Below, piece after piece: positions 595 to 50,683 of a stretch of DNA of 64,000 nucleotides; position 1 is the first letter of the stretch, and each line of letters opens with the position of its first letter. A program made the translations under genes and the position numbers. The stretch is from positions 62,001 through 126,000 of IMG/VR virus record IMGVR_UViG_3300048571_000088. The stretch is one strand, 5' to 3'. A model generated the notes under the pieces. The model did not search any database. It was not told where the DNA came from and saw only the letters and a list, made by a program, of their open reading frames with translations.

Positions 595-669
595 GCACCA
601 GTTGCAAGAATCGAACTTGCTATCTCTTCACAATTTTCTTGTGAGTGCTCTACCTTGAGCTACCTGATG
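595..669 (-). tRNA. tRNA-like / degenerate tRNA with an aberrant anticodon arm
   Basis: Minus strand shows a canonical D-arm (TAGCTCAAGGTAGAGC) and T-arm (GCAAG-TTCGATT-CTTGC). The anticodon arm TCACAA-GAAAA-TTGTGA is non-canonical, the acceptor stem is imperfect and there is no CCA. Confidence 0.55.
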
Positions 670-23250: not shown

Positions 23251-24576
23251 ATGACTAAAATTACAGTAATAGATGCAATAATGGGAGCAGGAAAGAGTTC
23301 TTATATTACCCATCTTATTCATAAAGCACCACATGATCAATCTTTTCTTTACATCACTCCGTTACTAAGTGAATGTCACAGGGTAGCTTGTACTACTTCA
23401 ACAAGATCTAAAGGAGAACCACCAAAGAGAGATTCTAATAATAATATTATCTATACAGAAACTACTAATCCTAATGCAGTAGATATAAGATATAGAAAGT
23501 TTAAACACCCTGAAGTGAAGAGTAGTGGAGGTAAGATTGATAGTTTAAAATATCTAGTTGAGCATAAGCATAATATTACTTCTACCCACTCATTACTCCT
23601 AAGACTAGAAGCGCAAAAAACAGAGTTATTTAATCTTAAAGATTATATATTGATAGTAGATGAAGCTTTAAATGCTTACTCTGAATATGATCAACTCAGT
23701 GCTTATACTGTTAAGCAACAGATTAAGAATGGATTATTTAGTATAGATCCAGATGGGTTTACACTTTTATTTCATCCAGAAGTTATAGGTACAACAGGGA
23801 GTATAGAAGGTTTAACTCAGTTAGAAGAGTATGCTGAACTTTGTAACAGGAGAGTATTACTTTTTGTGGGAGGTAAGATTATAGTTTGGGAGTTAAGTCC
23901 TGATTTATTAAACTCATTTAAAGAGGTGTGGTTTTGCACGTACCAATATAAAGGTACAGTATTGGATACTTATTTAATATCCAATGGATTTCAAGTACAG
24001 ATTACAACAATACCTACTAATAAGAAACCTTCTGACTATAAGCCTCTTATTACTATTATTGAAGAAGATAAACTGAATGCTATAGGCGCAGAAAAATACT
24101 CTTTAAGCTACACTGCTATGGAAGAGGTAGAAACTTTAGAAGTACTCAGAAAGAATTTGATGAATTTTTTTATCACTAAATGCTGTAACGCTACAGCGAA
24201 AGATCGTATCTGGACTTCCTATAAAGAGAAAAGAGATGTTAATAATAGAATTATTATTGTTAATAAAGTTATAGCAGGCAAAAATTACTTTAAACAATGG
24301 TTACCATTTAATACTAAAGCAACTAATGAATATTCTAATTGTCACAACGTAGCTTACCTTTGTAATATATTTCTTAATGTAGATATTAAGACTGTTGCTA
24401 GTAAGAAAGGTCATCCAGTTGATGAAGACATGCATGCGTTAAACGAGATGATCCAGTTTATCTGGAGATCTGCAATTAGAAACCAAGAACCAATTAATTT
24501 ATATATACCTTCTGCAAGAATGAGAAATCTCTTCAAGAGTTGGTTAAATGATGAGTACGAAATTAAGGAACTCTAA
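23251..24576 (+). CDS. SF2 helicase-like / origin-binding protein
   Basis: DAIMGAGKS Walker A, LIVDE Walker B, EMIQFIWRSAIR motif VI-like. Confidence 0.85.
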   Translation: MTKITVIDAIMGAGKSSYITHLIHKAPHDQSFLYITPLLSECHRVACTTSTRSKGEPPKRDSNNNIIYTETTNPNAVDIRYRKFKHPEVKSSGGKIDSLKYLVEHKHNITSTHSLLLRLEAQKTELFNLKDYILIVDEALNAYSEYDQLSAYTVKQQIKNGLFSIDPDGFTLLFHPEVIGTTGSIEGLTQLEEYAELCNRRVLLFVGGKIIVWELSPDLLNSFKEVWFCTYQYKGTVLDTYLISNGFQVQITTIPTNKKPSDYKPLITIIEEDKLNAIGAEKYSLSYTAMEEVETLEVLRKNLMNFFITKCCNATAKDRIWTSYKEKRDVNNRIIIVNKVIAGKNYFKQWLPFNTKATNEYSNCHNVAYLCNIFLNVDIKTVASKKGHPVDEDMHALNEMIQFIWRSAIRNQEPINLYIPSARMRNLFKSWLNDEYEIKEL

Positions 24577-39796: not shown

Positions 39797-40012
39797 CTAT
39801 TCGCCTGCGTACTCTGCTTCCTCAAGTACGAGGAAGACAATCTGGACGAGGCCTAGAGCCTTATCATGCTGCTCCAGACGATATTCCACATCCTCTGGGA
39901 TCTTCCCGAGGATGGTGTCATCCCCGATGTAGAAGCAATCAGAAGCAGGGATAACAACACCTGCTTCTGCCAGTTGGGTACGGATCGCTGCAGCATTGGT
40001 TTGCGCGTTCAT
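39797..40012 (-). CDS. hypothetical acidic early protein
   Basis: AGGAG SD, own leader. Confidence 0.65.
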   Translation of the reverse strand: MNAQTNAAAIRTQLAEAGVVIPASDCFYIGDDTILGKIPEDVEYRLEQHDKALGLVQIVFLVLEEAEYAGE

Positions 40013-40174
40013 GTATTTTCTCCTAATAGATGGGCATGACCCCAGGAAGGTTTGAGAGTTTCAACTGCTCTCACAGACTCTATATTATTTAGTGTGCATT
40101 AAGAGTTCGCACAGACTACAAGAGTTAGGTACACTCAATATCACGTACCTTCGTCCTGTAGGACTTTCTGTCTA

Positions 40175-40513
40175 TCAGCAGTTGTACTCAACCCAGGCTT
40201 GGCTGTACGCAGCTTGTCGTGCGTCGTGCCACTCTTTCAAGTTCACCAATTTCCCCGTCAAACCACCCCGGAAGGTGTCAGAGGTGATCTGAACTTCCAG
40301 TGGCGAATCCGCCGGTGTCTTGAATGTCACAAACCCACAGTTGTACATCTCGGACACCGAGTCCAGCAAGTCGCGGTCTGACTTGCTAACAGCTACGGTA
40401 ACGGGGCGGCCATTGAAGGCCAACTTCATTGAAGAAGTTATTTCGACCACGTCCCCAACTCTCTGAGTTGTATTCTTGTACATGATGTATTCTCCTTGAT
40501 TGATGGGCAGCAC
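40175..40513 (-). CDS. hypothetical protein, paralog of 38398..38733
   Basis: Shared motifs; likely start MYKNT. Confidence 0.75.
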   Translation of the reverse strand: MLPINQGEYIMYKNTTQRVGDVVEITSSMKLAFNGRPVTVAVSKSDRDLLDSVSEMYNCGFVTFKTPADSPLEVQITSDTFRGGLTGKLVNLKEWHDARQAAYSQAWVEYNC

Positions 40514-40595
40514 CCCAAGCTTAAAACTTCTTTACATATAAAACCCATAAGAGAGTCTCATATGTAAAGAAGGGGCGCAGGAGCACCCCAACTTT

Positions 40596-40808
40596 TTAAC
40601 ACACCTTCAATTCGTCCCCACAGTCAATACAAGCATAATACTCGTATTGATTTGTCATCCGGGAGAAGACACAGACGTGTCCGCAATGACAACGGAAGAA
40701 GTTACCCTCTTCGTTGATCTCTGCTACGGTCTGCACCTCTCCTTCGAGCTTTGCAGGTATTTTGGTGTACATGACGTTAGCCATATAGTAAAGTAACTCC
40801 ATTAACAA
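40596..40808 (-). CDS. small Zn-finger protein
   Basis: CHCGH...CIDCG. Confidence 0.6.
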   Translation of the reverse strand: MLMELLYYMANVMYTKIPAKLEGEVQTVAEINEEGNFFRCHCGHVCVFSRMTNQYEYYACIDCGDELKVC

Positions 40809-40840
40809 TGTGAGAAATTAAAAAGGTTTCTCACTTACCT

Positions 40841-41092
40841 TTAAACAATCTCAGTGAATGACTTTTCAGTCGTATCATAAGAGAATGTCTTAATACCTTG
40901 ATGACGGAGTGTCTGTAGTGCCTCATCAGCAGTACCAGCACTCATTACCACATTTTTCACCCCGAAGGATGAAATCTCTTCGGCGAACTTAATCGCTGCT
41001 TCAGAAGAATCAAGACGAACTTGATCCATCGAGACCACTTCCACCTCTACAGCAGAAGAAATTTCAACACCAAGAAAAACATAGATCTTCAT
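40841..41092 (-). CDS. hypothetical protein
   Basis: 83-aa ORF. Confidence 0.6.
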   Translation of the reverse strand: MKIYVFLGVEISSAVEVEVVSMDQVRLDSSEAAIKFAEEISSFGVKNVVMSAGTADEALQTLRHQGIKTFSYDTTEKSFTEIV

Positions 41093-41103
41093 AATGACCC
41101 CCC

Positions 41104-41460
41104 TTAGTACTGATAAGCAGTGAGTCGGAGCAGATCTTCAACCACTTCAGAATCAATTACATCTGAAGGGAGAAAACATACATCCCACCCTTGTACACCT
41201 ACAATCTCCCCGTACTTAATATGTAACAGGGAAACATAGGCTCCGTAATTACGAGCAAACTCTTTCTTCTCAGCTACAGAGAGGTCAGAGTAGTACTCAA
41301 AGGTCATAGCATGAAGCCATTGACCTTCTGCTACAGAATTACCTACTGTAGCATCTGGAGTCTTAGAGAAACGAACAACGTAAACATCGTTCAATTTCTC
41401 ACCAACACCCCAAGGATGTCCTATTGCGGAGTCCATCCAGTCATGGTCATGAGCGTACAT
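41104..41460 (-). CDS. hypothetical protein
   Basis: 118-aa ORF, GGAG SD. Confidence 0.65.
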   Translation of the reverse strand: MYAHDHDWMDSAIGHPWGVGEKLNDVYVVRFSKTPDATVGNSVAEGQWLHAMTFEYYSDLSVAEKKEFARNYGAYVSLLHIKYGEIVGVQGWDVCFLPSDVIDSEVVEDLLRLTAYQY

Positions 41461-41556
41461 AACAGTACTCCGACAAAAAGAATCAAACTTATAAGTACTA
41501 ACCAGGAATACTTATAAGTTTGATTGAGGGTTTCTTATAACCCTCAAAATACCAGC

Positions 41557-41808
41557 TTAGCTATGATTAGGGTGTATAGCGGTTGATCCGTCAGTGGCAG
41601 TCACTTGTACGTACCACGAGCGAGGACAATCCTCTGCATCTGCCATCACTTCGTAAGGCACGGCAATCGCCTCGCATGTGTCGACGAACATGGATTGATG
41701 AATGACGGCGGCATCCTTGTAGTCGCCGTCGAATCCCATGAAGTACTCATCATGGTACTTCTGCGCCTCTACTTCTATTTTCGAGACCAACTGCTCTGCC
41801 ATGTTCAT
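41557..41808 (-). CDS. hypothetical acidic protein
   Basis: 83-aa ORF, GGAG SD. Confidence 0.65.
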   Translation of the reverse strand: MNMAEQLVSKIEVEAQKYHDEYFMGFDGDYKDAAVIHQSMFVDTCEAIAVPYEVMADAEDCPRSWYVQVTATDGSTAIHPNHS

Positions 41809-42127
41809 ACTACATCTCCAAGACCAAAGAAAGGTGGTCAGCCTGTAATACTTCTTTATAGTTTATATCCATAGAAGAATACAATCTATAAAGAAACATG
41901 AGGTGAGAGAAACTGATCAAAAAGTAACCAGTTCTCTCACCTCCTCCTTAGATTCATCCTACCAACATCCAGTAGAACAAACCTAAAAATAATAAGAAAA
42001 TAATAAGAACAGATAACCATCCATTATTACTTTCTATCTTATCCTGATAATTCTTCATAAGAACACCTAAGATTAAGAAAGAGACTAATACATTTAATTA
42101 TACAGGCTGTATTCCCACCTGTAACCC

Positions 42128-42523
42128 TTACTTTACTGACATCAAGTACTCAATAACGTCAGCGAGGAGTTGTGGGTGCTCCTCAAGTTTGATCATACGG
42201 TGTCCGTACTCAACGAAGTCTTCCAACTTCAAAGATACGAGTGCAGCAGCACGCTCAACAATACCTTCATAGGAATTGCTGTCCACGACGTCTCCGTGGA
42301 AGTAGACTGCCATCGCAACGATAGCAAATTCTACTTCCATCTCTGCATGTACAGCAGAACTGCACCCATGTACCAGACGGTCAGACTGCACGTACACATT
42401 AAGCATACGTGCAGAAGTCCCAAATCCGTATACGAATTTATCATATACGGCAATTGGGGTATCCCCTACTACAGGGGCGTACGGGTCGTTGGTGACCCCA
42501 GCCATGTATCCCATATTGGACAC
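42128..42523 (-). CDS. hypothetical acidic protein
   Basis: 131-aa ORF, AAGGAG SD. Confidence 0.7.
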   Translation of the reverse strand: MSNMGYMAGVTNDPYAPVVGDTPIAVYDKFVYGFGTSARMLNVYVQSDRLVHGCSSAVHAEMEVEFAIVAMAVYFHGDVVDSNSYEGIVERAAALVSLKLEDFVEYGHRMIKLEEHPQLLADVIEYLMSVK

Positions 42524-42650
42524 TCCTTAACTCTGTGTGAGATTCAAAGGTTCTCACACTCTACCTTATTACATACTCTATATGTACTAAACACTAATAC
42601 ACATAAGTATATAAGATCAGTTTATACACTTGATCAGGTGTTGATCTGTT

Positions 42651-43331
42651 TCAGGAATGATCCCAAAACAGATCTGCGAACCACTCGGCAGTTGCTTGGA
42701 AGCTGCCATCTTCCTTACATCCGGCAATGTCTGCGCGGATGGCAGCTTCGGCTGCTTTGTTCCGGCCGACAACTCGCTGCCCTTTACGAGCAGCCATGTA
42801 GCTAGTGACAGCCGCAGGGACTGTCCATCCAGCTTTCTTATCTTCCCACTCGCACAGGAAGAGCTTGTAGCCTTCTTCGCGAGCAGCAGTTTCCACCCCC
42901 TCTGCTACTACAGGGGATGATGAAGGGATCACCACTTCTTGGTGATCTTTTCCTGCTGCCATTGCTTCGAATTTCTCGACAATGGCAAAGAATGCCTTCC
43001 GAGACACAGCAATTTCAGTCGTGTCATACTTGGACTCGCTAGTGCAAGCCCATAAGGTGAATCCGACTTTCCAGCCTGTGTCGGATTGATCACAAGGGAC
43101 ACTGATTTGCATCCCCTGTGCGAAGGTGAATGGTGCATTGTGATCAACAATGCGCACCTTGTTGCCCAGCATCTCTGCTGGCGTCAAGGCCATTACAGCC
43201 TCATTTGTTGCCAACACGGCAACAAGTTTGGCAGCTTTTTTGGCCGCCAGTTCGTCTTCGGTCGGCGGAGCAACATAGCTCTCATCCGCCACCCGACAAC
43301 CATAACGGTCATCGTACTGAAAATATGCCAT
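42651..43331 (-). CDS. hypothetical early protein
   Basis: 226-aa ORF, GGAGAATACATTATG leader. Confidence 0.7.
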   Translation of the reverse strand: MAYFQYDDRYGCRVADESYVAPPTEDELAAKKAAKLVAVLATNEAVMALTPAEMLGNKVRIVDHNAPFTFAQGMQISVPCDQSDTGWKVGFTLWACTSESKYDTTEIAVSRKAFFAIVEKFEAMAAGKDHQEVVIPSSSPVVAEGVETAAREEGYKLFLCEWEDKKAGWTVPAAVTSYMAARKGQRVVGRNKAAEAAIRADIAGCKEDGSFQATAEWFADLFWDHS

Positions 43332-43482
43332 AATGTATTCTCCAAAACTTGTGTGAGATTAATGAGGGTTCTCACACTTAACCCTAAACAAATATATAAA
43401 TACCAGTAAGTACCTGATACTCATATATTTATTAACTCTAATTAGAAGGATAGAGTTAATCCTTTGTTCAAGTGTACCGAGC

Positions 43483-43857
43483 TTATACAGCCCAGTACAT
43501 ACCAACGTGTTTAAAGACCGAAGTCTTACGCACACCTCCATTACCATCAGGCACGTCAACTGACACTCGGTCAGTGCAAGCGTACCCAACCCGATATCCA
43601 GCAGCTTGCAAAACTTCTTGCAGAACTGGCATGAAACTTGGCATGCCTCCGATCATAACGTGCCCACAGTCAATCCGCGCATCTTTCACAAGCCCAAGAA
43701 CCCGCTTAGCACGGGAGACAAGCTCCTCGTGGTCATAAATCGCAGGGAAGGTGATTGCCGCAACAAGCGCAGCTTTCAAATCACCTTGAAGATCGATGAC
43801 ACCAGACGCCAGTTGATCTTCAGTCGCGGCGTGTTGAGTCAGATTCAAAATGTTCAT
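43483..43857 (-). CDS. Csx20-like small Rossmann-fold protein, putative cyclic-oligoadenylate ring nuclease
   Basis: LNLTQH, ITFPAI, VMIGG, GY.V.YACTDR and KTSVFKH match the Csx20 pattern as recalled (N.TNH, PFP.V, V...GE, GI.V.AAC.ER, K...F.F). Confidence 0.6.
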   Translation of the reverse strand: MNILNLTQHAATEDQLASGVIDLQGDLKAALVAAITFPAIYDHEELVSRAKRVLGLVKDARIDCGHVMIGGMPSFMPVLQEVLQAAGYRVGYACTDRVSVDVPDGNGGVRKTSVFKHVGMYWAV

Positions 43858-43985
43858 AATGTATTCTCCATAATGACGGGCATCACCCCGAGTACTTTTA
43901 GATGAGGGAGTAATAAAACCCTCTAGGAATTATTCCACATATAGGTACTAGATTTCTCCAATACCTATAAATTGAATAATTAAGC

Positions 43986-44501
43986 TCATTGAGTAATAAA
44001 GGAGAGCTTTACACCTTCAGATGACGTCTCGCTTAAAGAAGATAAAGCATCAAAGCAAGCCTTAGCTTTACTCTTATACTTTAAAGCTTCTTTCTCAGGA
44101 TCAAGTCCAAGTATGGTACGAGTAAACTCAGCACCATACTCAGTAATCCGAGAATTATCAAGAGCATCATATGCTTTAACCAACAAAGCAATACGATTAC
44201 CACTTGATAACAAGCGATTCAATGCAGTCTCAGAAGTTTCACCTTCCATCTTAGTAACAAGACGTAAAGCTTCCTTCCCTTCATCTGTACTCAAGAACTT
44301 ATAACAGTCCTCAAATACATATGAAGTATCCTCGACTACATCATGAAGAACAGCTACAACTAGTGAATCACCAGTGTAACCATCCTTCCTCATCAGACCA
44401 TACACCCTAAGAGGATGATTGATGTATGGTTCTTCATCTCCTCTTCTCATCTGACCTTCATGTGCCAGACGAGAAAAAGAGATAACTTCTTGTATTCCCA
44501 T
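43986..44501 (-). CDS. HD-domain (p)ppGpp hydrolase-like protein (small alarmone hydrolase / Mesh1-like)
   Basis: AHEGQ.R...PYINHP...AVLHDVVEDT...LVKAYDALDN. Confidence 0.9.
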   Translation of the reverse strand: MGIQEVISFSRLAHEGQMRRGDEEPYINHPLRVYGLMRKDGYTGDSLVVAVLHDVVEDTSYVFEDCYKFLSTDEGKEALRLVTKMEGETSETALNRLLSSGNRIALLVKAYDALDNSRITEYGAEFTRTILGLDPEKEALKYKSKAKACFDALSSLSETSSEGVKLSFITQ

Positions 44502-44545
44502 AGTACCTCCAAGGGATAAACAAGAAACTCGAACATTTAATTACC

Positions 44546-44568
44546 CAGAGGCTGTTCAACCACCTCTG
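44546..44568 (-). terminator. hairpin between the SAS-like and SAH-like genes
   Basis: CAGAGG-11 nt-CCTCTG. Confidence 0.4.
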
Positions 44569-44584
44569 TCAGATTCAGACACTA

Positions 44585-45136
44585 CTAACTACGTTTCCAC
44601 GCATCAGTGTAAATCTGAATCTGACGACGAACAAGGCGTTCCATTGCCTTAAATTCGTCGGAGTCAAGCTCATCAGCATACAAATGAGCTTGAGCCACGA
44701 GGGAACGCTGTCCCTCGTACAACCGATGTCCATAATCCTTGGCCTGGATCATGGCAACGGTATTGATTTGCAGCTCGCAGATCATACCGTCAATCGTGAC
44801 ATATACCAAAATGTCACGGTACATCGGAGCAGGGACATTCACCCCTGCTCGGAGCCAGTTTCTCTTAACCGTAACTGGTAAAACGGTGGTGATTGCAGCC
44901 AGCACTTCCTGTGCTTCTGCCGCTGTGGTTACCACTAGGGTTCCACGAACAGCATCTTTCAGGCGACTGCAATCACCTTTGTAGTCCGCCAGAACCTTTT
45001 CCATGGCTCTGGCGTAGCTTTTGATCGGTGCCAACATAACATCAGCACCAATCTGCCCGGCAACCTTGGTGACCACGGAGTCAAACTCCGCTTTAACCTT
45101 AGCTGCCGAAGCTAGCAAATCAATCAGTTCTTGCAT
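44585..45136 (-). CDS. RelA/SpoT-type nucleotidyltransferase (small alarmone synthetase-like)
   Basis: PIKS..RA.EK, KDAVRG, YRD and CELQINT...GH.LYE correspond to the SYN motifs. Confidence 0.8.
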   Translation of the reverse strand: MQELIDLLASAAKVKAEFDSVVTKVAGQIGADVMLAPIKSYARAMEKVLADYKGDCSRLKDAVRGTLVVTTAAEAQEVLAAITTVLPVTVKRNWLRAGVNVPAPMYRDILVYVTIDGMICELQINTVAMIQAKDYGHRLYEGQRSLVAQAHLYADELDSDEFKAMERLVRRQIQIYTDAWKRS

Positions 45137-45209
45137 AGAACCTCCTGATCAATTGTATGTGAGATTTACAAAAGGTTCTCACACATAACCTAATTTCTTA
45201 CTTTTATAA

Positions 45210-45296
45210 TCACCCAAAAAGGATAAGTATAAAAGTAAGAAAAGACAGTTTACTGACATGTCTAGGTCGTATGGCTCTGCGTTTACGACGTTTCAT
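45210..45296 (-). CDS. 28-aa basic-then-hydrophobic micropeptide
   Basis: MKRRKRRAIRPRHVSKLSFLTFILILFG with AGGAG SD; degenerate copy at 38061-38107. Confidence 0.4.
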   Translation of the reverse strand: MKRRKRRAIRPRHVSKLSFLTFILILFG

Positions 45297-45549
45297 GAGA
45301 AACTCCTGCAGAGGGATAGAGTGTTTAATAAGGTACACTCTAATGAGACCTAATTACTTTAATATTTAATGAGGTAAAGTAAGAAAACCTCAAGAAATCA
45401 ATTCTGCTCTGCATCTAGCGCGGTGAGCACCAGAACATGAAGCAGAATTGAAATCAAAACATAAGCGAGAACGCCCATATTAAAAACTCCAAAACAACAA
45501 TAAGGTTCTCTACTTAAAAAGGTGAGAGAACACAACCTACGTCTCAAGC

Positions 45550-45753
45550 TTAACGACCAAGAATCTCGTTAAGCTTGAGACGGCAACGATTTGCCTTACG
45601 ATGAAGACGGTCACGATCTTCATCGTCTTCCTGGGAGTTGCAATCCCAAGAGTCTTCCCATCCGTGGGAAGAGGTAGTTTCGAGATCCTCGCGAACCTCG
45701 TGGATCTGTCTTACCAACAGATCCGAATACTCTAGGCGAGTCACGGAAGACAC
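45550..45753 (-). CDS. hypothetical acidic/basic small protein
   Basis: 67-aa ORF. Confidence 0.55.
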   Translation of the reverse strand: MSSVTRLEYSDLLVRQIHEVREDLETTSSHGWEDSWDCNSQEDDEDRDRLHRKANRCRLKLNEILGR

Positions 45754-46147
45754 TCCATAAGAAGGTAAGCGGAGATTATGGCTTCCGCTTGTAGCCGTCA
45801 GAGAGCATTTGACTCCAGTAGGTAAAAGAACCTACAAAGAGAAAATGCCTCCAAGAGGATAAACCTCAAAAGAACCATAAGGCTCTTTCGGAGTCAACCC
45901 TCAAGAAGGGCATGATGGTCGCGCCAAACCCAGACCACCCCAAGTGAGGAATCGGAGGCGCGACCGCGAGCGCACGAGCACAATATGACACTAAGCCATA
46001 AGACGGTCGAGGCACGGAGTCACCAGTCCACATTTGTCTGGTGTATAGCGAGTAGCGAGCGGAGTAAGTGTTTTCTTTAACTACAACCCAACTCAGTACT
46101 TGTTCTTTTGGCTGCCATCTTCAGTACTAGGGAACCACCACTAGTAG

Positions 46148-46167
46148 ACTGCCCCTCCCAGGGCAGT
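46148..46167 (-). terminator. GC hairpin after RNAP2
   Basis: ACTGCCC-ctccca-GGGCAGT. Confidence 0.5.
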
Positions 46168-46178
46168 TTCGGCTTGTA

Positions 46179-49100
46179 TTAAGGTTTAATTGCTACCGCT
46201 GCATTCAAGAGATACGCTTGAATGCTTTGGTTAACAACTACCTCAGGTCTTGACATCAGCTCAGTCACGTCACCGATCTTCGATACCTTATTCAGGTTAC
46301 CAAAGACCAGCTCCATGGCATCTACGTTGACTTTTGCATCATGCCCAACAGCAGCAAGTGCATGTACCATCAACGTAAGGATGATGATGTCCATCCCTTT
46401 GGCAGAAACGTTATACTCTTTCTGCAATTCCGCCGAGTAGAACATCTTCTCGAACGAAATCTGATAAGCTTCGCGCAAGCTTACAACTTCTGCTACCTTT
46501 TCAGATAACATTTTAGCTTGACGTTGCTTAATTACAGTGAGTAACGCTCCTGCATTATTGGCAAGGAGTTCCTCGGAATCCCATGCATACATTTGTACCC
46601 AAGCTTTCGCTTCAGCTTCAGTATACACAGGGGCGATACGGGCACAACTTTGGGGTGACATTACCTTCGCCAACATCTTGGCTGCCATCTCCCCAATTGC
46701 CCGTTTGATTCGATCCATCGAATCGCTTTGGGTTGCTCCACCCTGCAGATTTACCAGTGAGCGTACAACAGCCTTCACTAGTTTATCATACACATGTGCC
46801 ATACCAGCCACATTCTTACGGATACCTACCCGCATCAGCATAGTTGCTGGCAGATAGGAACCCGAAAGGAGCACCTCTTTTACAACTTTACGTGCCAAGT
46901 CCTCACGGCTCTGCGTCAATTGTTGCGCATGGGTGAAGAGTCCGACGTTACCACGTGCCAGACCAGCCTTTACAACAGCCTTGGTGATGTCTTCCCATGT
47001 ATGCAACACATGGGTAACCACTTTCGGCACCAATGGTGTCCACAAACCTTCCAATTCCGCTTTCACGAAATCAATGGTAGCTTGAGCCACTGGGTTGACA
47101 CTTTCGTCCAACGGTGCATCTTGTTGAACGACCTTACCAAGCCCATCCTTCAGAATAGACTTGTTTGGAACAAGGTAGACGCTACCTGTGTCCCCGTCAC
47201 CGTCATCCTGCCCATGCAATACGAACATTGCATTGTGCAGTTGTGCAGTACCCATCAAGATTGCATCTAAAGAAGACTGAACCTTGTTTCGCACTACCCA
47301 CACACGGCGAACAGCATTGGCCATGATGGTTGGAGGCTTGGCGAACACCGCACCAACACCTGAAGAGTAGCTCTTGCAGGCGCTGTGGTACTGCTCATCA
47401 AGCACAGGAGATGCAACTTCACCGTACCCGAGACTCCACGACGAGACGATCAGACCCGTCGACCCGTGGGCATGAACCTGCCCAAGTTGCTTGCCAAGAA
47501 CACTGTTCCGACATTCCAAGATACTCTCTTTCAAGATACCCCAGACTGTCTCTGTTCTTCCTGAAGCGTCGATAGTGGTAGTGTACCACACCGCCTCAAG
47601 TATGGCAGCAAGCAGACCTTGCGTTTTGATCAGAGTGCCTTTGTTGGACACACTGACCAGTTTTTCCAATACCTTGGTACCAGGGAAGATCATCTCAGTC
47701 CCGTCTGGGAACTGAAGATTTGCCCACTCGGCATCACCAAGTTGGAACAACTGCGCAATGACAATCTCGCCATGCAGGGTCATTCCATGGTCACGCTCCA
47801 ACCAGTTCTTTTCCTTACGAACTTCGTGAAGCGTGTTTACCATATCTTCCATATTAACATCGAAGATGTCTTTACGGTCGATGGTGCCCGGGTGTAGCAA
47901 CTTGAAAGCCAGTTGCAGTTGCTCAACATCAGCTCCTGCTTTCTCACCTTCAAGTACAGCATTTACAAATGCTTCAGCTTGGTCAGTACCATAGTTGGAG
48001 CTGATAGACTGAAGCATTTGTACGTTAGTTTTGACGCTAACGTTTTTACGACGGATTTCTCCGGCTCCAACTAACTCTAGCAGGCTTTCTGCTAGAGTTA
48101 TTCCTCTTTGCTGCGACAACGCAAAGGCTCGTTTTGTAACCGAACCCTTGTTTGCAAGGCCAGTGCAACGATGCACAGCAACTTGACAGAACGACTCAAA
48201 CCCTACCGATTCTTCTGGTACGAGTTCGAACACTGCGCAAGCTGCTGACTCAGTGATGCGGTAATCAGCATCACGTACTATCGCAACAGAGATAACATCT
48301 CCATTGGTCAGTGTTGCATCTTGCCACGGAAGGCTGGCTTTTGACGCAGCAGCTTTCACCGCTGTGTACGGCAGAATGACAATGTTAGTGTCACACTCCA
48401 TCGTCAACAACTCAGCCACCACATCAGCTTCGCGGATCAATGGATCAACCACATCTTCCACGTAGGCTAGACCAACCTTCTGACCCAGCACAGCAAACCC
48501 AACACAGCGAACTGCACCGAATTGATGCCAAGCGTGGGTGTTGAAGCCACCTGAGCCGATTGCACCACTAGCTTCAACCGCCTTGACGGTCTCTGCTTGG
48601 TACTGGCCTCGCTTGGTGCTATCTAAAGCGTACACCACCGTTGTAGCAGTGAACGGGATAGTACCATCATCCGTCGTGCCTTTCACTTGCTTCGATAGAC
48701 GAGCAATCAGTTTTTCAACCGACTCTGCCGAAACAATCCCATCTGCATCTGGTGCTGCGAATACGTTCGCTTTCCGGATATACGAATCCAGTTTTTGAAC
48801 GTACCCATGCTTTTCATGATTTTCAGCATGAAGGCTTGCACCGAAGCCTTTCTTACTGAGAGTCTCTGTTACAGCAGACTCTCCTTCATTCCAGATACCT
48901 TTCAGGACAGTTCCTGTTGGGCCATCTAGAACAACACACATGGCAGGATTAGCTCTTAATCCTGCCAGTTCCACACCGGCCTTATGCGCTAACAGAGCGT
49001 CAATAACGACTCCATTTTTGCTAGGCTGTGCGTTTTTGTCCAGCACAATGATCTGCTCTTTTTCAGCGATCAGGATAAGTTTGGTCATCTTTTCGACAGG

Positions 49101-49613
49101 CAAGATGACCCCAGCCTTCTTGCTATCCTTCCTTACGACCCGCAGATTGAATCCGTTAGGATGCCCGATGTGGAAGTCCCAGACAGACTTGTGTTGCTCA
49201 AGCCCTGCTTCTGGTTGGAGCAACTGCATAGCAGCAAGGAGGATCTGTGGCAACGCTGTTTCCAGCTCTAACGGCAACCCCAAAGCTAGCGACTCACCAG
49301 CTTTCACTGATTCCCATGCCTGTCTCAGAGGTGTCTTGATGTAACGTTTCTCTCCTTTTAGTCCAAGAGTTGTTGCACGATCTTGGAGCAGACTACGAAC
49401 CCGGATACGACAGGCATTCCGAAGCGATACAACTTGCTCCGATTGCGTACCCAGGTTCTGGGTGGTTGTGACCAACTCAGCCAGGTTATGGCAATGAGTG
49501 ATCAATGATACCAAAGCCCGGTTACGGTCTTCTGCCGCTGTATCGTGAGACGTTGTCTCATCGATGTAAGCGACCAGAGCCTCGAGGGTCTTGATGTTGG
49601 TGTTAGTAGTCAT
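46179..49613 (-). CDS. single-chain two-barrel RNA polymerase-like protein (RNAP2)
   Basis: Beta-like GQKVG / IVILPYTAVKA / DYRITE, then beta'-like FAKPP and HGQDDGDGD (DxDGD, about 47190-47216); collinear with 13696..17184. Confidence 0.75.
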   Translation of the reverse strand: MTTNTNIKTLEALVAYIDETTSHDTAAEDRNRALVSLITHCHNLAELVTTTQNLGTQSEQVVSLRNACRIRVRSLLQDRATTLGLKGEKRYIKTPLRQAWESVKAGESLALGLPLELETALPQILLAAMQLLQPEAGLEQHKSVWDFHIGHPNGFNLRVVRKDSKKAGVILPVEKMTKLILIAEKEQIIVLDKNAQPSKNGVVIDALLAHKAGVELAGLRANPAMCVVLDGPTGTVLKGIWNEGESAVTETLSKKGFGASLHAENHEKHGYVQKLDSYIRKANVFAAPDADGIVSAESVEKLIARLSKQVKGTTDDGTIPFTATTVVYALDSTKRGQYQAETVKAVEASGAIGSGGFNTHAWHQFGAVRCVGFAVLGQKVGLAYVEDVVDPLIREADVVAELLTMECDTNIVILPYTAVKAAASKASLPWQDATLTNGDVISVAIVRDADYRITESAACAVFELVPEESVGFESFCQVAVHRCTGLANKGSVTKRAFALSQQRGITLAESLLELVGAGEIRRKNVSVKTNVQMLQSISSNYGTDQAEAFVNAVLEGEKAGADVEQLQLAFKLLHPGTIDRKDIFDVNMEDMVNTLHEVRKEKNWLERDHGMTLHGEIVIAQLFQLGDAEWANLQFPDGTEMIFPGTKVLEKLVSVSNKGTLIKTQGLLAAILEAVWYTTTIDASGRTETVWGILKESILECRNSVLGKQLGQVHAHGSTGLIVSSWSLGYGEVASPVLDEQYHSACKSYSSGVGAVFAKPPTIMANAVRRVWVVRNKVQSSLDAILMGTAQLHNAMFVLHGQDDGDGDTGSVYLVPNKSILKDGLGKVVQQDAPLDESVNPVAQATIDFVKAELEGLWTPLVPKVVTHVLHTWEDITKAVVKAGLARGNVGLFTHAQQLTQSREDLARKVVKEVLLSGSYLPATMLMRVGIRKNVAGMAHVYDKLVKAVVRSLVNLQGGATQSDSMDRIKRAIGEMAAKMLAKVMSPQSCARIAPVYTEAEAKAWVQMYAWDSEELLANNAGALLTVIKQRQAKMLSEKVAEVVSLREAYQISFEKMFYSAELQKEYNVSAKGMDIIILTLMVHALAAVGHDAKVNVDAMELVFGNLNKVSKIGDVTELMSRPEVVVNQSIQAYLLNAAVAIKP

Positions 49614-49656
49614 ATTGATATAACTAATTCTAACTGGTTTCTAACTACGACCAAGC

Positions 49657-50124
49657 TTACGCTTGAGCCGTCGCAACCAGTTTTGCTGCTTTGCGAGCAG
49701 CGTGACGTGCACGGCGATCCGCTACACGAGCGGTCTTCCCTGTTACACGGACAACTGCTGTTGCAGGGAGGGTTGCAGCAGGAGCGGTCTTTGGAGCAGC
49801 TTTCGCCACTCCTTTCCCGGCCAGGAGCATCAGCCGCAGGGATGTTCTCCCTGCGACATAACTAGCCTGAACATTGGCACGACGGCGTGCCTCTTTGGCT
49901 AGCCGACCTTGCCGAGCTGTTTCCAGCTCTTGTTTCGTGGCAAGGTGAGCACGAAGCTCTGCTTTGGCCTCGGCCAAAGCCAACGCGTTGGAGGCACGGG
50001 TTTCAACCCAACGGCTCACGCCGTAGCCAGGCTTCACGTTCAAGGAGGCAACGCGTGCCTCCAGGGTCGAGATTTGTGTCTCACGGCTTACGCCGTGAGC
50101 TGGCCGTGATTTGATTGCCTTCAT
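49657..50124 (-). CDS. Ala/Arg/Lys-rich basic protein (histone-like, putative nucleic-acid binding)
   Basis: Composition; AGGAG SD; directly upstream of RNAP2. Confidence 0.7.
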   Translation of the reverse strand: MKAIKSRPAHGVSRETQISTLEARVASLNVKPGYGVSRWVETRASNALALAEAKAELRAHLATKQELETARQGRLAKEARRRANVQASYVAGRTSLRLMLLAGKGVAKAAPKTAPAATLPATAVVRVTGKTARVADRRARHAARKAAKLVATAQA

Positions 50125-50144
50125 GATTTATCTCCTGTATGGAT

Positions 50145-50683
50145 AGGCTCATTACACCTACTCTGCCTAGTACAGAGAAAAGAGGGAATAACTAGAATGT
50201 ACAGCAGGGTACTTAAACCCATGTAGACCTGTGCTACATACACACCTTTCTTTTATTAAATAGTGAGTAAAGGATCTCACTAGCTGTTTCGTCCTTTTGG
50301 ACTCATCAGTGTTACCTCACAGTAACAGACAGCAGCACACTATATTTTATATCCTGTGTGCTATAGGATAAGACAATGGAACGCTCAGCTCTTACAGAAC
50401 GTTCCACATACGCCGCAACTGCACCACCATGTTGAACTCAACCTGGCTCAAGCCTGGGAAAGTTGCACCGTCGCCCAGGCGTACAACTTCCACGACGGTG
50501 CAACCACATGGCACGAATGCCATGTCTGCGACTTCCAGGACAACGAACCCTTGCTTATCCAGCATATTCATACGATCCATGATATTCTCCTTAAAGACAG
50601 GCTCATTACACCTGTTGGTATATGTACAAGGGCTAACCTATATACATATACCATTACTGCCTAGTACAGTAGATAATAACTAG
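50145..50683 (-). promoter_or_regulatory. duplicated upstream element before the two terminal minus-strand genes
   Basis: AGGCTCATTACACCT at 50145 and 50599; CTGCCTAGTACAG at 50163 and 50657; AATAACTAG at 50187 and 50675. Confidence 0.65.
50392..50580 (-). CDS. hypothetical small protein
   Basis: AAGGAG SD; preceded by the duplicated element. Confidence 0.55.
   Translation of the reverse strand: MDRMNMLDKQGFVVLEVADMAFVPCGCTVVEVVRLGDGATFPGLSQVEFNMVVQLRRMWNVL

What the first reader, a model, noticed from the sequence alone, without database searches (positions are those of the whole stretch)
43986..45136. Adjacent stand-alone RelA/SpoT-type synthetase and HD hydrolase
A minimal SAS-like gene is followed by an SAH/Mesh1-like gene, with a hairpin between them. 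SAH antitoxins for toxSAS enzymes are known. In a lytic phage's early region the pair could transiently make and then remove (p)ppGpp or (p)ppApp, modify tRNA, or counter host alarmone-based defence. The synthetase motifs are atypical (KDAVRG, YRDI), so substrate specificity is open.
Basis: partly seen in the sequence, partly recalled or inferred. Interest (0 to 1): 0.65.

Follow-up and report, generated by a model that had tools for sequence, protein, structure and literature searches.

The report
Phage alarmone synthetase–hydrolase gene pair
A 243-kb freshwater phage carries, side by side, a small enzyme of the kind that makes bacterial "alarm" nucleotides and a small enzyme that destroys them, a free-standing version of toxin–immunity pairs already known from other phages and bacteria.

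Summary
Two minus-strand genes lie 83 nt apart: A (44585-45136, 183 aa) and B (43986-44501, 171 aa).

A is a complete, stand-alone RelA/SpoT-type synthetase domain.
- Model pLDDT is 91.5. The best solved match is Tas1 (Z 15.6, 30% identity; profile E 7e-19).
- The donor-site and catalytic residues are invariant.
- Its acceptor motif, YRDIL, is not the YxGxN of the (p)ppApp makers Apk1/Apk2. It is the GYRD type of RelV/VpEAS, which make only (p)ppGpp.

B is an intact small alarmone hydrolase.
- Pfam HD_4 scores above its cut-off.
- Structural matches are Aph1 (Z 17.4) and PaSAH/MESH1 (about 16).
- It has guanine-type Arg-Arg at the base pocket and lacks the (p)ppApp-specific Aph1 signature.

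The pair is conserved in all four closer relatives examined. YRD-type synthetase domains sit beside three different hydrolase lineages, so the linkage looks functional.

My reading: a phage-expressed alarmone synthetase, making (p)ppGpp more likely than (p)ppApp, with an enzymatic antidote or brake.

The hairpin between the genes is real and conserved, with compensatory changes. The genome's only hammerhead ribozyme lies upstream.

This is a new variant of a known kind. Product, toxicity, timing and phage lifestyle are untested.

The parts
44585..45136 (-). Gene A: a stand-alone RelA/SpoT-type synthetase (toxSYNTH-like) domain, 183 aa, of the RelV/Tas1 superfamily, 'YRD' clade. Motifs: APIKSYARAMEK (syn1), KDAVRGT (syn2), MYRDIL (syn3), ELQINT (syn4).
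   Evidence: ORF with Shine-Dalgarno sequence. Family profile against Tas1, E 6.8e-19. Model pLDDT 91.5. VIA-align: Tas1 Z 15.6, 164 residues aligned, 30% identity. K39, K47, D61, R64 and Y106 are invariant and E121 is nearly invariant; Q123 is conserved and invariant. dN/dS 0.13-0.15.
43986..44501 (-). Gene B: a small alarmone hydrolase (HD domain), 171 aa, with metal and catalytic residues H29, H53-D54, E57-D58, D112 and N116, and a guanine-type R19-R20 pocket.
   Evidence: Pfam HD_4 29.8 bits, above the 27.2 cut-off. TIGR00691 E 1e-11. Rel hydrolase domains E 2e-10, MESH1 E 7e-9, Aph1 E 3e-7. Model pLDDT 91.9. Aph1 Z 17.4, PaSAH 16.4, MESH1 16.3. Invariant residues. Pocket mapping.
44546..44568 (-). 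Conserved intergenic stem-loop just after the stop codon of A. It has a 6-7 bp stem of the form NNNGGU...GCCN'N'N', and a loop that begins GG and ends ACA.
   Evidence: Fold. The same element occurs at the orthologous A-B spacer in L003, L004, L008 and L009 and at a second site, with five different compensated stems.
44533..44543 (-). Invariant AT-rich box TAATTAAATGT, 2-3 nt after the hairpin and about 30 nt before B's ribosome-binding site. It could be a -10-like promoter element or a processing or protein-binding site.
   Evidence: There are only two exact copies in the 242.6-kb genome, both directly after the hairpin. The core AATTAAATGT is invariant in the relatives.
46106..46174 (-). Type II hammerhead ribozyme, 5 nt after the stop of the 1144-aa gene and about 970 nt upstream of A. 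It is the only one in the genome.
   Evidence: Rfam RF02276, 56.2 bits against a gathering score of 37. Single copy in the genome. The same family lies upstream of A's orthologues in L003, L009, L006 and L012.
42090..42122 (-). Second copy of the hairpin plus TAATTAAATGT element, after the 131-aa gene.
43483..43857 (-). Next gene downstream of B: a 124-aa protein of the MJ1673 family (PF27247). It is syntenic and 86-89% identical in relatives. Whether it belongs to the module is unknown.
   Evidence: Synteny and identity. Family assignment from the relatives' precomputed Pfam hits and the Atlas clusters. No direct Pfam hit at E 0.01.

Best explanation
A and B form a two-gene alarmone module carried by a jumbo phage.

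Gene A is a free-standing, catalytically competent RelA/SpoT-type pyrophosphokinase. It would take the beta-gamma pyrophosphate of ATP and put it on the 3'-OH of a purine nucleotide.
- By its acceptor-loop motif (YRD, as in RelV and VpEAS) and by the kind of hydrolase that travels with it, the product is most likely (p)ppGpp, possibly with some (p)ppApp.
- I put the odds at roughly 55% mainly (p)ppGpp or dual, 25% mainly (p)ppApp, and 20% other or inactive.
- A has no delivery domain (no MuF, portal, PAAR, LXG or signal peptide), so it would be made from the phage genome inside the infected cell rather than injected.
- Fast enzymes of this superfamily stop growth by draining GTP or ATP and by alarmone signalling.

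Gene B is an intact Mn-type HD hydrolase. It would remove the 3'-pyrophosphate again and so act as an enzymatic antidote or brake, in the manner of a type IV antitoxin.

The conserved hairpin and AT-rich box between the genes, and the hammerhead upstream, suggest that the two genes are not simply co-expressed at a fixed ratio.

What is shown: the fold, the catalytic residues, the motif class, conservation of the pair, purifying selection, and the RNA elements.
What is inferred: activity, product, toxicity, neutralisation, timing, and the benefit to the phage (host shut-off or exclusion of competitors).
For: Synthetase identity:
- The family profile matches Tas1 at E 6.8e-19.
- Foldseek and VIA-align cover the whole length: Tas1 Z 15.6, SAS1/2 Z 15.0, SaEAS Z 14.9.
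- K39, K47, D61, R64 and Y106 are invariant and E121 nearly so; Q123 is conserved there and invariant. These correspond to the FaRel2 donor and catalytic residues K66, K74, D90, R95, Y128 and E145 (PMC11782079) and to Tas1 R330 and E382 (PMC12691689).

Motif class:
- A has DAVRGT / MYRDIL / ELQIN.
- RelV (Q9KSN2_VIBCH) and Q87Q55_VIBPA, the only hit from the VpEAS source strain and taken here to be VpEAS, have DLARAT / SGYRDLN / AEVQLH. Both RelV and VpEAS are (p)ppGpp-specific.
- Tas1, the Javan119 Apk2 and a Sphingomonas homologue have YxGxN.
- A has L110 where Tas1 has the ATP-site residue N370.

Hydrolase:
-.
- R19-R20 align with TtRel R43/R44, the guanine stackers, and with Aph1 D24/K25. 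B has R118 and E121 where Aph1 has D116 and R119 (PMC10083569).

Linkage:
- The pair has an 83-89 nt spacer in all four contigs at 67-70% identity.
- A stand-alone homologue at 34% identity has an HD_4 gene 1.8 kb downstream.
- In PHB04-like phages the fused domain is followed by a MESH1-like hydrolase in five of nine distinct loci.
- In all three hydrolase lineages that sit next to YRD-type synthetases, the Aph1-D24 position is Arg. In the three hydrolases next to YxGxN-type synthetases it is Asp.

Precedent:
- SAH enzymes neutralise toxSAS enzymes (PMC7229694).
- Aph1 neutralises Apk2 (PMC10083569).
Against: - No activity, toxicity or expression data exist; no RNA run holds the locus.
- A itself is below the Pfam RelA_SpoT cut-off.
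- The nearest solved relative, Tas1, makes (p)ppApp. The syn2 R-x-T pattern is shared with Apk enzymes (PMC12226406).
- Motif swaps did not convert Apk2 to a (p)ppGpp synthetase, so motifs alone do not set specificity.
- The motif/pocket correlation rests on three lineages against three.
- The hydrolase is absent within 4-5 kb of the homologues at 48% and 38% identity and from four of the nine distinct fused phage loci, so it is not obligatory.
- Stand-alone phage hydrolases are far more common than the synthetase: 269 phage records against one phage, deposited as two records. B could therefore have a role of its own.
- A is compositionally unlike B: GC3 is 51% against 27%.
Confidence: 0.6

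Rival explanations
1. A is an Apk-type (p)ppApp synthetase like Tas1/Apk1 and Apk2. It depletes ATP and ADP and inhibits purine synthesis, and B is its (p)ppApp-degrading immunity enzyme.
For: Tas1 is the best sequence and structure match in the PDB. A shares the syn1 form P-x-K with Tas1, the R-x-T form of syn2 and the x-N form of syn4. B's best structural match is the phage (p)ppApp hydrolase Aph1 (Z 17.4, 28% identity). The closest fused relative is a MuF protein, as Apk2 is (P0054).
Against: A lacks the YxGxN signature and the residue equivalent to Tas1 N370. B lacks Aph1 D24, D116 and R119. No Tis1/IapK-like small gene lies nearby. The PDB holds no RelV-type structure, so 'closest to Tas1' partly reflects what has been solved. 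RelV and VpEAS, which share A's motifs, make only (p)ppGpp.
Confidence: 0.25
2. The two genes are functionally independent. B is a counter-defence or host-manipulation hydrolase that removes host (p)ppGpp or undoes toxSAS damage, as proposed for other phage SAHs. A acts separately, and their adjacency is incidental.
For: HD hydrolases of this type occur in 269 phage records without a synthetase. Phage SAHs neutralise all tested toxSAS enzymes (PMC7229694). HD-alarmone phosphodiesterases are listed as counter-nucleotide defences of jumbo phages (PMC7824862). Relatives carry a second copy of the hydrolase 3.2 kb away and the window's genome has another HD gene. Some A homologues have no hydrolase nearby. 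A and B differ in GC3.
Against: The adjacency and the 83-89 nt spacer, with its conserved hairpin, are kept across 30-36% protein divergence. Three unrelated hydrolase lineages sit next to YRD-type synthetase domains, and a fourth type sits next to YxGxN-type ones, with a matching pocket residue.
Confidence: 0.15
3. A is a tRNA 3'-CCA pyrophosphokinase like FaRel2, PhRel2 or CapRel. It blocks translation, and B removes the modification.
For: The fold is shared (CapRel Z 12.4). SAH enzymes also neutralise the translation-targeting toxSAS enzymes (PMC7229694).
Against: A is structurally nearer to nucleotide-making enzymes (Z 15-15.6) than to CapRel (12.4) or FaRel2 (7.9). No sequence match to those families was found. 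Its pI is neutral, 6.7. No zinc-finger-type antitoxin gene is adjacent, although that is the mode of control typical of tRNA-targeting toxSAS enzymes (PMC11782079).
Confidence: 0.07
4. The pair is a toxin-antitoxin or exclusion cassette. Its benefit is to the element itself, through addiction during pseudolysogeny or abortive exclusion of other phages, as with Phrann gp29/gp30, rather than through host take-over.
For: The two-gene toxSAS-like architecture fits (PMC7229694). A sits in a GC-rich island unlike the rest of the genome. The neighbourhood is variable.
Against: No integrase or lysogeny gene was found, although only PF00589 was searched. The antidote is an enzyme, not a labile binder, so classical addiction is less obvious. 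There is no PADLOC hit.
Confidence: 0.2

Closest known systems
FaRel-ATfaRel of Cellulomonas marina (toxSAS with an SAH type IV antitoxin; PMC7229694)
   Same: A small stand-alone synthetase gene lies next to a small HD hydrolase gene that would neutralise it by degrading its product. The architecture is conserved as a short operon.
   Different: FaRel has a second, Tis1-like protein antitoxin and sits in a bacterial chromosome. A belongs to another branch (RelV/Tas1-like, YRD motif). The window shows no binder antitoxin. The carrier is a 243-kb phage.
Apk2-IapK-Aph1 of temperate phages (MuF polymorphic toxins; PMC10083569, PMC12226406). Seen here in Streptococcus phage Javan119.
   Same: A phage-encoded Tas1-superfamily synthetase domain is followed by an HD hydrolase. 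B's best structural match is Aph1. A's closest fused relative is a MuF protein.
   Different: Apk2 is fused to MuF next to the portal gene, carries YxGxN, makes only (p)ppApp, and has a small IapK/Tis1 immunity gene. Aph1 has the D24/D116/R119 signature. A is free-standing with YRD, no MuF is detected in the genome, no IapK-like gene is present, and B has R19, R118 and E121 at those positions.
RelV (V. cholerae VC1224) and VpEAS (V. parahaemolyticus VP1295), (p)ppGpp-specific synthetases of the Apk1-homologue set (PMC12691689)
   Same: The same syn2/syn3/syn4 motif class (D-x-x-R-x-T, GYRD, E-x-Q-x-[HN]). Both are small single-domain enzymes that are toxic when cytoplasmic.
   Different: RelV and VpEAS carry a Sec signal peptide and have no adjacent immunity gene. 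A has neither a signal peptide nor an export domain, and it has a hydrolase neighbour. A direct alignment of A with RelV was not run, because the RelV sequence was available only as text in a supplement.
Tas1/Apk1-Tis1 of Pseudomonas aeruginosa (PDB 6ox6)
   Same: The best solved relative of A: Z 15.6, 30% identity over 164 residues, covering the whole toxin domain.
   Different: Tas1 is the C-terminus of a PAAR effector of the type VI secretion system, is neutralised by a binder (Tis1), and has YSGVN with N370. A has YRDIL.
RelA/SpoT domains in phage polyvalent, MuF-fused and portal-fused virion proteins (PMC5512222). Example: Bordetella phage PHB04 gp034-gp033-gp032.
   Same: The same YRD clade (32-38% identity to A), with a hydrolase two genes downstream in five of nine distinct loci. 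The published prediction is that phages trigger an alarmone-like response.
   Different: In those proteins the domain is the C-terminus of 480-2115-aa proteins that are probably packaged and injected, followed by a 56-86-aa gene and a MESH1-like hydrolase. In the window the domain is a solo 183-aa protein with a different hydrolase lineage.
Stand-alone phage SAHs (PbcSpo of PVP-SE1, PaSpo of SSU5; HD-alarmone phosphodiesterases of jumbo phages; PMC7229694, PMC7824862)
   Same: B is a single-domain phage hydrolase of the same superfamily with an intact active site.
   Different: As reported in the passages read, those hydrolases stand without a synthetase partner. B is paired with one.

Membership tests
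RSH superfamily, small alarmone synthetase (SYNTH/toxSYNTH domain) | Pfam RelA_SpoT (PF04607) match at or above the gathering score | tested here: not met
   A scores 15.6 bits against a cut-off of 27. Clade members do pass: PHB04 gp034 30.6, P0055 33.6, P0057 27.6.
RSH superfamily, small alarmone synthetase (SYNTH/toxSYNTH domain) | SYNTH fold (a central antiparallel sheet flanked by helices) over the whole domain | tested here: met
   Model pLDDT 91.5. Tas1 Z 15.6, SAS1 15.0, SAS2 15.0, SaEAS 14.9, all covering residues 1-183.
RSH superfamily, small alarmone synthetase (SYNTH/toxSYNTH domain) | Donor-site and catalytic residues: syn1 Lys/Lys, syn2 Asp and Arg, acceptor-loop Tyr, syn4 Glu-x-Gln | tested here: met
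   K39, K47, D61, R64 and Y106 are invariant and E121 nearly invariant; Q123 is conserved there and invariant. Mapped to FaRel2 and Tas1 residues from PMC11782079 and PMC12691689.
RSH superfamily, small alarmone synthetase (SYNTH/toxSYNTH domain) | Pyrophosphokinase activity | not testable with these tools
   Needs an enzyme assay.
Apk1/Apk2 adenosine 3'-pyrophosphokinases ((p)ppApp synthetase toxins) | Sequence homology to the Tas1 toxin domain | tested here: met
   phmmer E 6.5e-10; profile E 6.8e-19.
Apk1/Apk2 adenosine 3'-pyrophosphokinases ((p)ppApp synthetase toxins) | Apk signature at syn3 (G-x-N, as in Y-S-G-V-N), including the residue equivalent to Tas1 N370 | tested here: not met
   A has Y-R-D-I-L (L110). 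Tas1, the Javan119 Apk2 and Sphingomonas L036 have YxGxN. The signature is taken from PMC12226406.
Apk1/Apk2 adenosine 3'-pyrophosphokinases ((p)ppApp synthetase toxins) | An N-terminal delivery domain (PAAR for Apk1, MuF for Apk2) | tested here: not met
   A is 183 aa, which is the toxin domain only. No Phage_Mu_F hit was found in the genome.
Apk1/Apk2 adenosine 3'-pyrophosphokinases ((p)ppApp synthetase toxins) | An adjacent Tis1/IapK-type binder immunity gene | tested here: not met
   No ORF in 38.0-50.2 kb resembles the small genes that follow fused or solo homologues. No ORF between A and the hammerhead is conserved in relatives. The test was by sequence only, so a fold-level relative could be missed.
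RelV/VpEAS-like (p)ppGpp-specific synthetases (exported alarmone synthetases) | The GYRD-type acceptor loop together with D-x-x-R-x-T and E-x-Q-x-[HN] | tested here: met
   Motif comparison with Q9KSN2_VIBCH and Q87Q55_VIBPA from the supplement of PMC12691689 against A.
RelV/VpEAS-like (p)ppGpp-specific synthetases (exported alarmone synthetases) | A Sec signal peptide or other export domain | tested here: not met
   Residues 2-29 of A form the first helix of the domain, aligned with Tas1 from residue 246. There is no N-terminal extension.
toxSAS-SAH toxin-antitoxin module (type IV-like) | A conserved two-gene arrangement of synthetase and hydrolase | tested here: met
   The window plus L003, L004, L008 and L009, with a spacer of 83-89 nt. 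The arrangement is lost in more distant homologues.
toxSAS-SAH toxin-antitoxin module (type IV-like) | Toxicity of the synthetase and rescue by the hydrolase | not testable with these tools
   Needs co-expression assays.
Small alarmone hydrolase (RSH HD domain) | HD_4 match above the cut-off, with intact metal and catalytic residues (His, His-Asp, Glu-Asp, Asp, Asn) | tested here: met
   29.8 bits against 27.2. H29, H53, D54, E57, D58, D112 and N116 are invariant.
Small alarmone hydrolase (RSH HD domain) | The SAH fold | tested here: met
   Model pLDDT 91.9. Aph1 Z 17.4 (rmsd 2.1 A over 137 residues), PaSAH 16.4, MESH1 16.3, RelH 15.2.
Aph1 family of (p)ppApp-specific hydrolases | The signature D24, R96, D116, R119, K133, Y134 (PMC10083569) | tested here: not met
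   Mapped through the Javan119 Aph1 homologue and the 7smg sequence: D24 corresponds to R19, D116 to R118, R119 to E121. R96 is ambiguous. K133-Y134 possibly corresponds to K141-Y142, but the register differs between MAFFT/phmmer and the structural alignment.

The most novel reading that the evidence does not exclude
The locus is a self-contained, phage-encoded 'alarmone pulse' device. A ribozyme-processed transcript delivers a very fast stand-alone (p)ppGpp synthetase that imposes a stringent-like shut-off, or GTP drain, on the host. A conserved hairpin and AT-box switch between the genes delays or meters the hydrolase that ends the pulse. More broadly, the acceptor-loop type of the synthetase (YRD against YxGxN) and the base-pocket residue of the linked hydrolase (Arg against Asp) co-vary. 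That would give a sequence rule predicting which alarmone each of the thousands of Tas1/RelV-like toxin domains makes.
Probability: 0.2. Interest if true: 0.75.

Novelty: new variant of a known kind. Interest (0 to 1): 0.55.

Why it matters
Alarmone-synthetase toxins are known in three settings: as injected or secreted effectors, as bacterial toxin-antitoxin modules, and as MuF fusions of temperate phages. Phage hydrolases are known as lone counter-defence genes.

A free-standing synthetase paired with a hydrolase in a jumbo phage would mean that a virus makes and unmakes an alarmone from inside the infected cell. That is a direct handle on how phages use the stringent-response currency for take-over or for competition.

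The motif/pocket co-variation found here, if it holds, gives a cheap predictor of product specificity across a family of more than 5,000 cluster representatives. The family is mostly uncharacterised polymorphic toxins.

The pair is small, 183 and 171 aa, and can be tested directly in E. coli.

Tried and rejected
- Near-identity DNA search of the phage collection found no match. tblastn with the 1144-aa neighbour also found nothing, so the phage has no close deposited relative.
- NCBIfam gave nothing for A. PADLOC gave nothing for A or B.
- PHROGs and Pfam on ten neighbours gave no informative hits.
- Search for a Tis1/IapK-like binder gene. The small ORFs that follow fused or solo homologues fall into at least two families, and none resembles any ORF in window 38.0-50.2 kb.
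- Integrase (PF00589) and MuF (PF04233) are absent from the genome. Serine recombinases were not searched, so the lifestyle stays open.
- Expression. No RNA run holds the locus; all 24 runs are DNA from freshwater metagenomes. I therefore did not use read laying.
- The hairpin as an intrinsic terminator is rejected: there is no U-tract and the scan did not call it. A single-sequence fold is not significant.
- RNAalifold and MAFFT on the spacers mis-registered the stems because loop lengths differ. I therefore read the stems directly, and the count of structure pairs was not run.
- The AT-box as a genome-wide promoter motif is rejected: only two exact copies exist.
- A PDB search with the C-terminal half of B, meant to see the Aph1 alignment, found nothing. 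This was solved via the Javan119 homologue.
- The search for related loci with the wide alignment A7 failed for lack of a conserved stretch.
- Contexts of P0069, P0150 and P0186 were too short to be informative.
- A direct alignment of A with RelV/VpEAS was left out. Those sequences were available only as text in a supplement, with no reference id.
Full report
**Where we are.** The window is bases 62001-126000 of a 242,588-base virus record that CheckV rates as complete. The record comes from freshwater metagenomes. It has no close relative among deposited phages. The finding lies in a long block of small minus-strand ORFs without family matches. On one side is an 1144-aa gene of unknown function; tail-fibre genes start on the other strand about 3 kb beyond it.

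**The observation.** Two minus-strand ORFs occupy exactly the reported interval.
- A is at 44585-45136 and encodes 183 aa.
- B is at 43986-44501 and encodes 171 aa.
- They are 83 nt apart, and each has a GGAGG ribosome-binding site.
- Against orthologues at 64-70% identity, dN/dS is 0.13-0.15 for A and 0.23-0.28 for B. dS is saturated, so the values are approximate, but both genes are clearly under constraint.

**Gene A is a complete, bare synthetase domain.**
- Pfam RelA_SpoT alone is sub-threshold: 15.6 bits against a cut-off of 27.
- The only solved protein that A finds by sequence is Tas1, the type VI (p)ppApp synthetase toxin of Pseudomonas aeruginosa (E 6.5e-10).
- A profile of 20 family members raises this to E 6.8e-19 over Tas1 chain positions 245-375.
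- The AlphaFold model is confident (pLDDT 91.5).
- The model aligns end to end with Tas1 (Z 15.6, 164 residues, 30% identity), with SAS1 and SAS2 (Z 15.0) and with the exported synthetase SaEAS (Z 14.9).
- The tRNA-modifying enzymes are further away: CapRel Z 12.4 and FaRel2 Z 7.9.
- The residues that bind the donor ATP and magnesium in FaRel2 and Tas1 have counterparts that are invariant or nearly so in A's family: K39, K47, D61, R64, Y106, E121 and Q123.
- A has no extra N- or C-terminal domain and no signal peptide. Its pI is 6.7.

**Which branch of the superfamily?** An exhaustive profile search finds 5,307 cluster representatives at E <= 1e-3 and 305 at E <= 1e-30.
- The 150 best have a median length of 660 aa and reach 4,564 aa. 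They are mostly multidomain polymorphic-toxin-like proteins.
- Only 8 of the 150 are 230 aa or shorter.
- The closest fused relatives carry a Phage_Mu_F domain (P0054, 2,115 aa), a portal domain (P0058) or the polyvalent-protein InPase domain (P0063).
- Neighbours of other homologues carry ddrB-ParB, InPase, DUF3560 and ART-PolyVal domains.
- This is the world of virion-packaged 'polyvalent' proteins, in which RelA/SpoT domains have already been described and predicted to trigger an alarmone-like response (PMC5512222).
- At least 129 of the 150 representatives share A's acceptor-loop motif Y-R-D, and none has the Y-x-G-x-N of Tas1.
- Y-x-G-x-N is the published signature of the (p)ppApp-specific Apk enzymes (PMC12226406). 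I see it in Tas1, in the Apk2 of Streptococcus phage Javan119 and in a Sphingomonas homologue.
- The GYRD type, together with D-x-x-R-x-T and E-x-Q-x-H/N, is what V. cholerae RelV (Q9KSN2) and V. parahaemolyticus Q87Q55 carry in the supplement of PMC12691689. Q87Q55 is the only hit from the VpEAS source strain, and I take it to be VpEAS.
- That paper shows RelV and VpEAS to make (p)ppGpp exclusively and to be toxic when kept in the cytoplasm.
- A also has Leu where Tas1 has its ATP-site residue N370.
- So 'closest to Tas1' partly reflects what has been crystallised. By motif, A sits with the (p)ppGpp makers.
- Motif swaps did not convert Apk2 to a (p)ppGpp synthetase, so this is a lead and not a proof.

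**Gene B is an intact small alarmone hydrolase.**
- It passes Pfam HD_4 and matches TIGR00691 (E 1e-11).
- It matches the hydrolase domains of Rel and SpoT enzymes, MESH1, Lmo0812 and Aph1.
- H29, H53-D54, E57-D58, D112 and N116 are invariant.
- The model (pLDDT 91.9) is closest to Aph1, the phage (p)ppApp hydrolase (Z 17.4, rmsd 2.1 A over 137 residues, 28% identity). PaSAH (16.4) and MESH1 (16.3) are within about one unit.
- Aph1's specificity signature is D24, R96, D116, R119, K133 and Y134. The D24R/R119A double mutant gains ppGpp hydrolysis (PMC10083569).
- I read the Aph1 sequence from its alignment with the Javan119 homologue and carried it to B. B has R19 at the D24 position, R20 at K25, R118 at D116 and E121 at R119. 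Only the Lys-Tyr pair may be kept.
- R19-R20 are the positions of the guanine-stacking R43/R44 of Thermus Rel.
- B is therefore not an Aph1-type (p)ppApp specialist. It has the pocket of enzymes that take (p)ppGpp, several of which also take (p)ppApp.

**Is the pairing meaningful?**
- All four contigs that carry orthologues of A at 67-70% identity have the hydrolase directly downstream, 83-89 nt away.
- A 191-aa solo homologue at 34% identity has an HD_4 gene 1.8 kb downstream.
- In Bordetella phage PHB04 and its metagenomic relatives, the domain is the C-terminus of a 480-721-aa protein encoded right after the portal gene. It is followed by a 56-86-aa gene and, in five of nine distinct loci, by a hydrolase that is MESH1-like (E 5e-36 to human MESH1).
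- So YRD-type synthetases are accompanied by three separate hydrolase lineages.
- In all three lineages the residue at the Aph1-D24 position is Arg. In the hydrolases next to Y-x-G-x-N synthetases (Javan119, B. caccae Aph1 itself, Sphingomonas) it is Asp.
- This co-variation, three lineages against three, supports both the functional coupling and a purine preference that differs from Apk/Aph1.
- On the other side, the homologues at 48% and 38% identity have no hydrolase within 4-5 kb. Four of the nine distinct fused phage loci, and a separate 314-aa homologue (L010/L011), also lack one.
- The published Apk2 loci likewise sometimes lack theirs. There a small binder immunity gene is the constant partner.
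- No such small gene is detectable in the window.
- In bacterial genomes, the five relatives the scan reached are all fused proteins.

**RNA features.** The stem-loop after A's stop codon (44546-44568) looks unremarkable on its own.
- An almost identical arrangement stands after the 131-aa gene at 42090-42122: a stem, a loop beginning GG and ending ACA, then TAATTAAATGT, then about 30 nt, then the ribosome-binding site.
- Both sites are kept in L003, L004, L008 and L009.
- The three outer base pairs differ between copies (AGA/UCU, ACA/UGU, AGU/ACU, CGU/ACG, CUU/AAG) and are always complementary.
- The box occurs exactly only at these two places in the genome.
- This is a selected structure. 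Whether it is a terminator-promoter junction, a processing site or a protein-binding site cannot be told from sequence.
- Upstream, 5 nt after the 1144-aa gene, lies a type II hammerhead ribozyme (56.2 bits against a gathering score of 37). It is the only one in the 243-kb genome.
- The same family lies between the large upstream gene block and A's orthologue in four related contigs from both the 70% and the 48% clades.
- The 970 nt between the ribozyme and A hold no conserved ORF.

**Interpretation.** The best-supported reading is a phage-borne alarmone module.
- A is made inside the infected cell and transfers pyrophosphate from ATP to a purine nucleotide.
- B reverses the reaction, as ATfaRel does for FaRel and Aph1 does for Apk2.
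- I favour (p)ppGpp, or a dual product, over (p)ppApp for the reasons above. tRNA modification is the least supported.
- The benefit to the phage is not shown. It could be a transient stringent-like shut-off or GTP/ATP drain during take-over, exclusion of competing phages, or a toxin-antitoxin-like function.
- The RNA elements hint at metered or staged expression but prove nothing.
- 'Lytic' and 'early' remain assumptions.

**Novelty.** Every ingredient is known:
- toxSAS with an SAH antitoxin;
- MuF-Apk2 with Aph1 in temperate phages;
- RelA/SpoT domains in phage polyvalent proteins;
- lone alarmone hydrolases in jumbo phages.

What is new is the combination: a solo, delivery-domain-free RelV/Tas1-type synthetase, paired with a Rel-pocket hydrolase, in a jumbo phage, without a binder immunity gene, and with conserved RNA elements around it. 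I rate it a new variant of a known kind and of moderate interest. The motif/pocket rule is its most useful by-product.

Noticed in passing
window 46106-46174 (-); also L006 3378-3452, L012 4110-4184, L003 and L009 2547-2619: A type II hammerhead ribozyme (RF02276, 56.2 bits) lies directly after the 1144-aa gene. It is the only one in the 243-kb genome and is conserved at the syntenic place upstream of A's orthologues in two clades.
   Followed up: partly
window 42090-42122 (-) and 44533-44568 (-): A two-copy intergenic element made of a compensated hairpin plus an exact TAATTAAATGT box. It is also present at both orthologous sites in four related contigs. Its function is unknown.
   Followed up: partly
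window 43483-43857 (-): A 124-aa protein of the MJ1673 family (PF27247, mostly viral) lies directly downstream of B. At 86-89% identity to relatives it is more conserved than A or B. It has a weak PADLOC hit to the CRISPR-associated Csx20 (E 0.0016).
   Followed up: partly
window about 40000-50500: A GC-rich island (45-55% GC) in a genome of 33% GC. A, the 124-aa, 131-aa and 1144-aa genes are 48-50% GC, but B in their midst is 39% (GC3 27%). A is also richer in GC than its neighbour in every relative.
   Followed up: partly
G000:C1:52117-52485 (-), outside the window (L014 1252-1761): A second, distant HD-domain gene in the same phage (Pfam HD E 3e-6, 24% identical to B). The relatives instead carry a close paralogue of B (55% identity) about 3.2 kb downstream of the pair.
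   Followed up: partly
window 46179-49613 (-): A 1144-aa protein with no Pfam, PHROG, PADLOC or phage-database match. It is only 26% identical to the 1,190-1,327-aa proteins at the same place in relatives.
   Followed up: partly
window 20804-22036 (-) and 23251-24576 (+): Two paralogous phrog_2467 genes on opposite strands. Relatives in other phages are annotated variously as homing endonuclease or helicase, so they are probably mobile genes.
   Followed up: no
window 595-668 (-): ARAGORN calls a tRNA-Phe with anticodon AAA, which is unusual for bacteria and phages (GAA is the norm).
   Followed up: no
L012 2914-3252: A group I intron (RF00028, 62 bits) in a related phage contig, overlapping the end of the DUF723 gene upstream of the synthetase.
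   Followed up: no
L001 5567-5776, L023 6564-6782, L025 6594-6854, L026 3010-3183; L010 5942-6175 and L031 981-1214: Two families of 57-86-aa genes immediately follow YRD-type synthetase genes, whether fused or solo. They are candidates for Tis1/IapK-like binder immunity proteins and are absent from the window.
   Followed up: partly
window 45140-45190 (-), just upstream of A: An inverted repeat (GTGTGAGA...TCTCACA) lies 15-45 nt before A's ribosome-binding site. Relatives have different hairpins at the same place.
   Followed up: no
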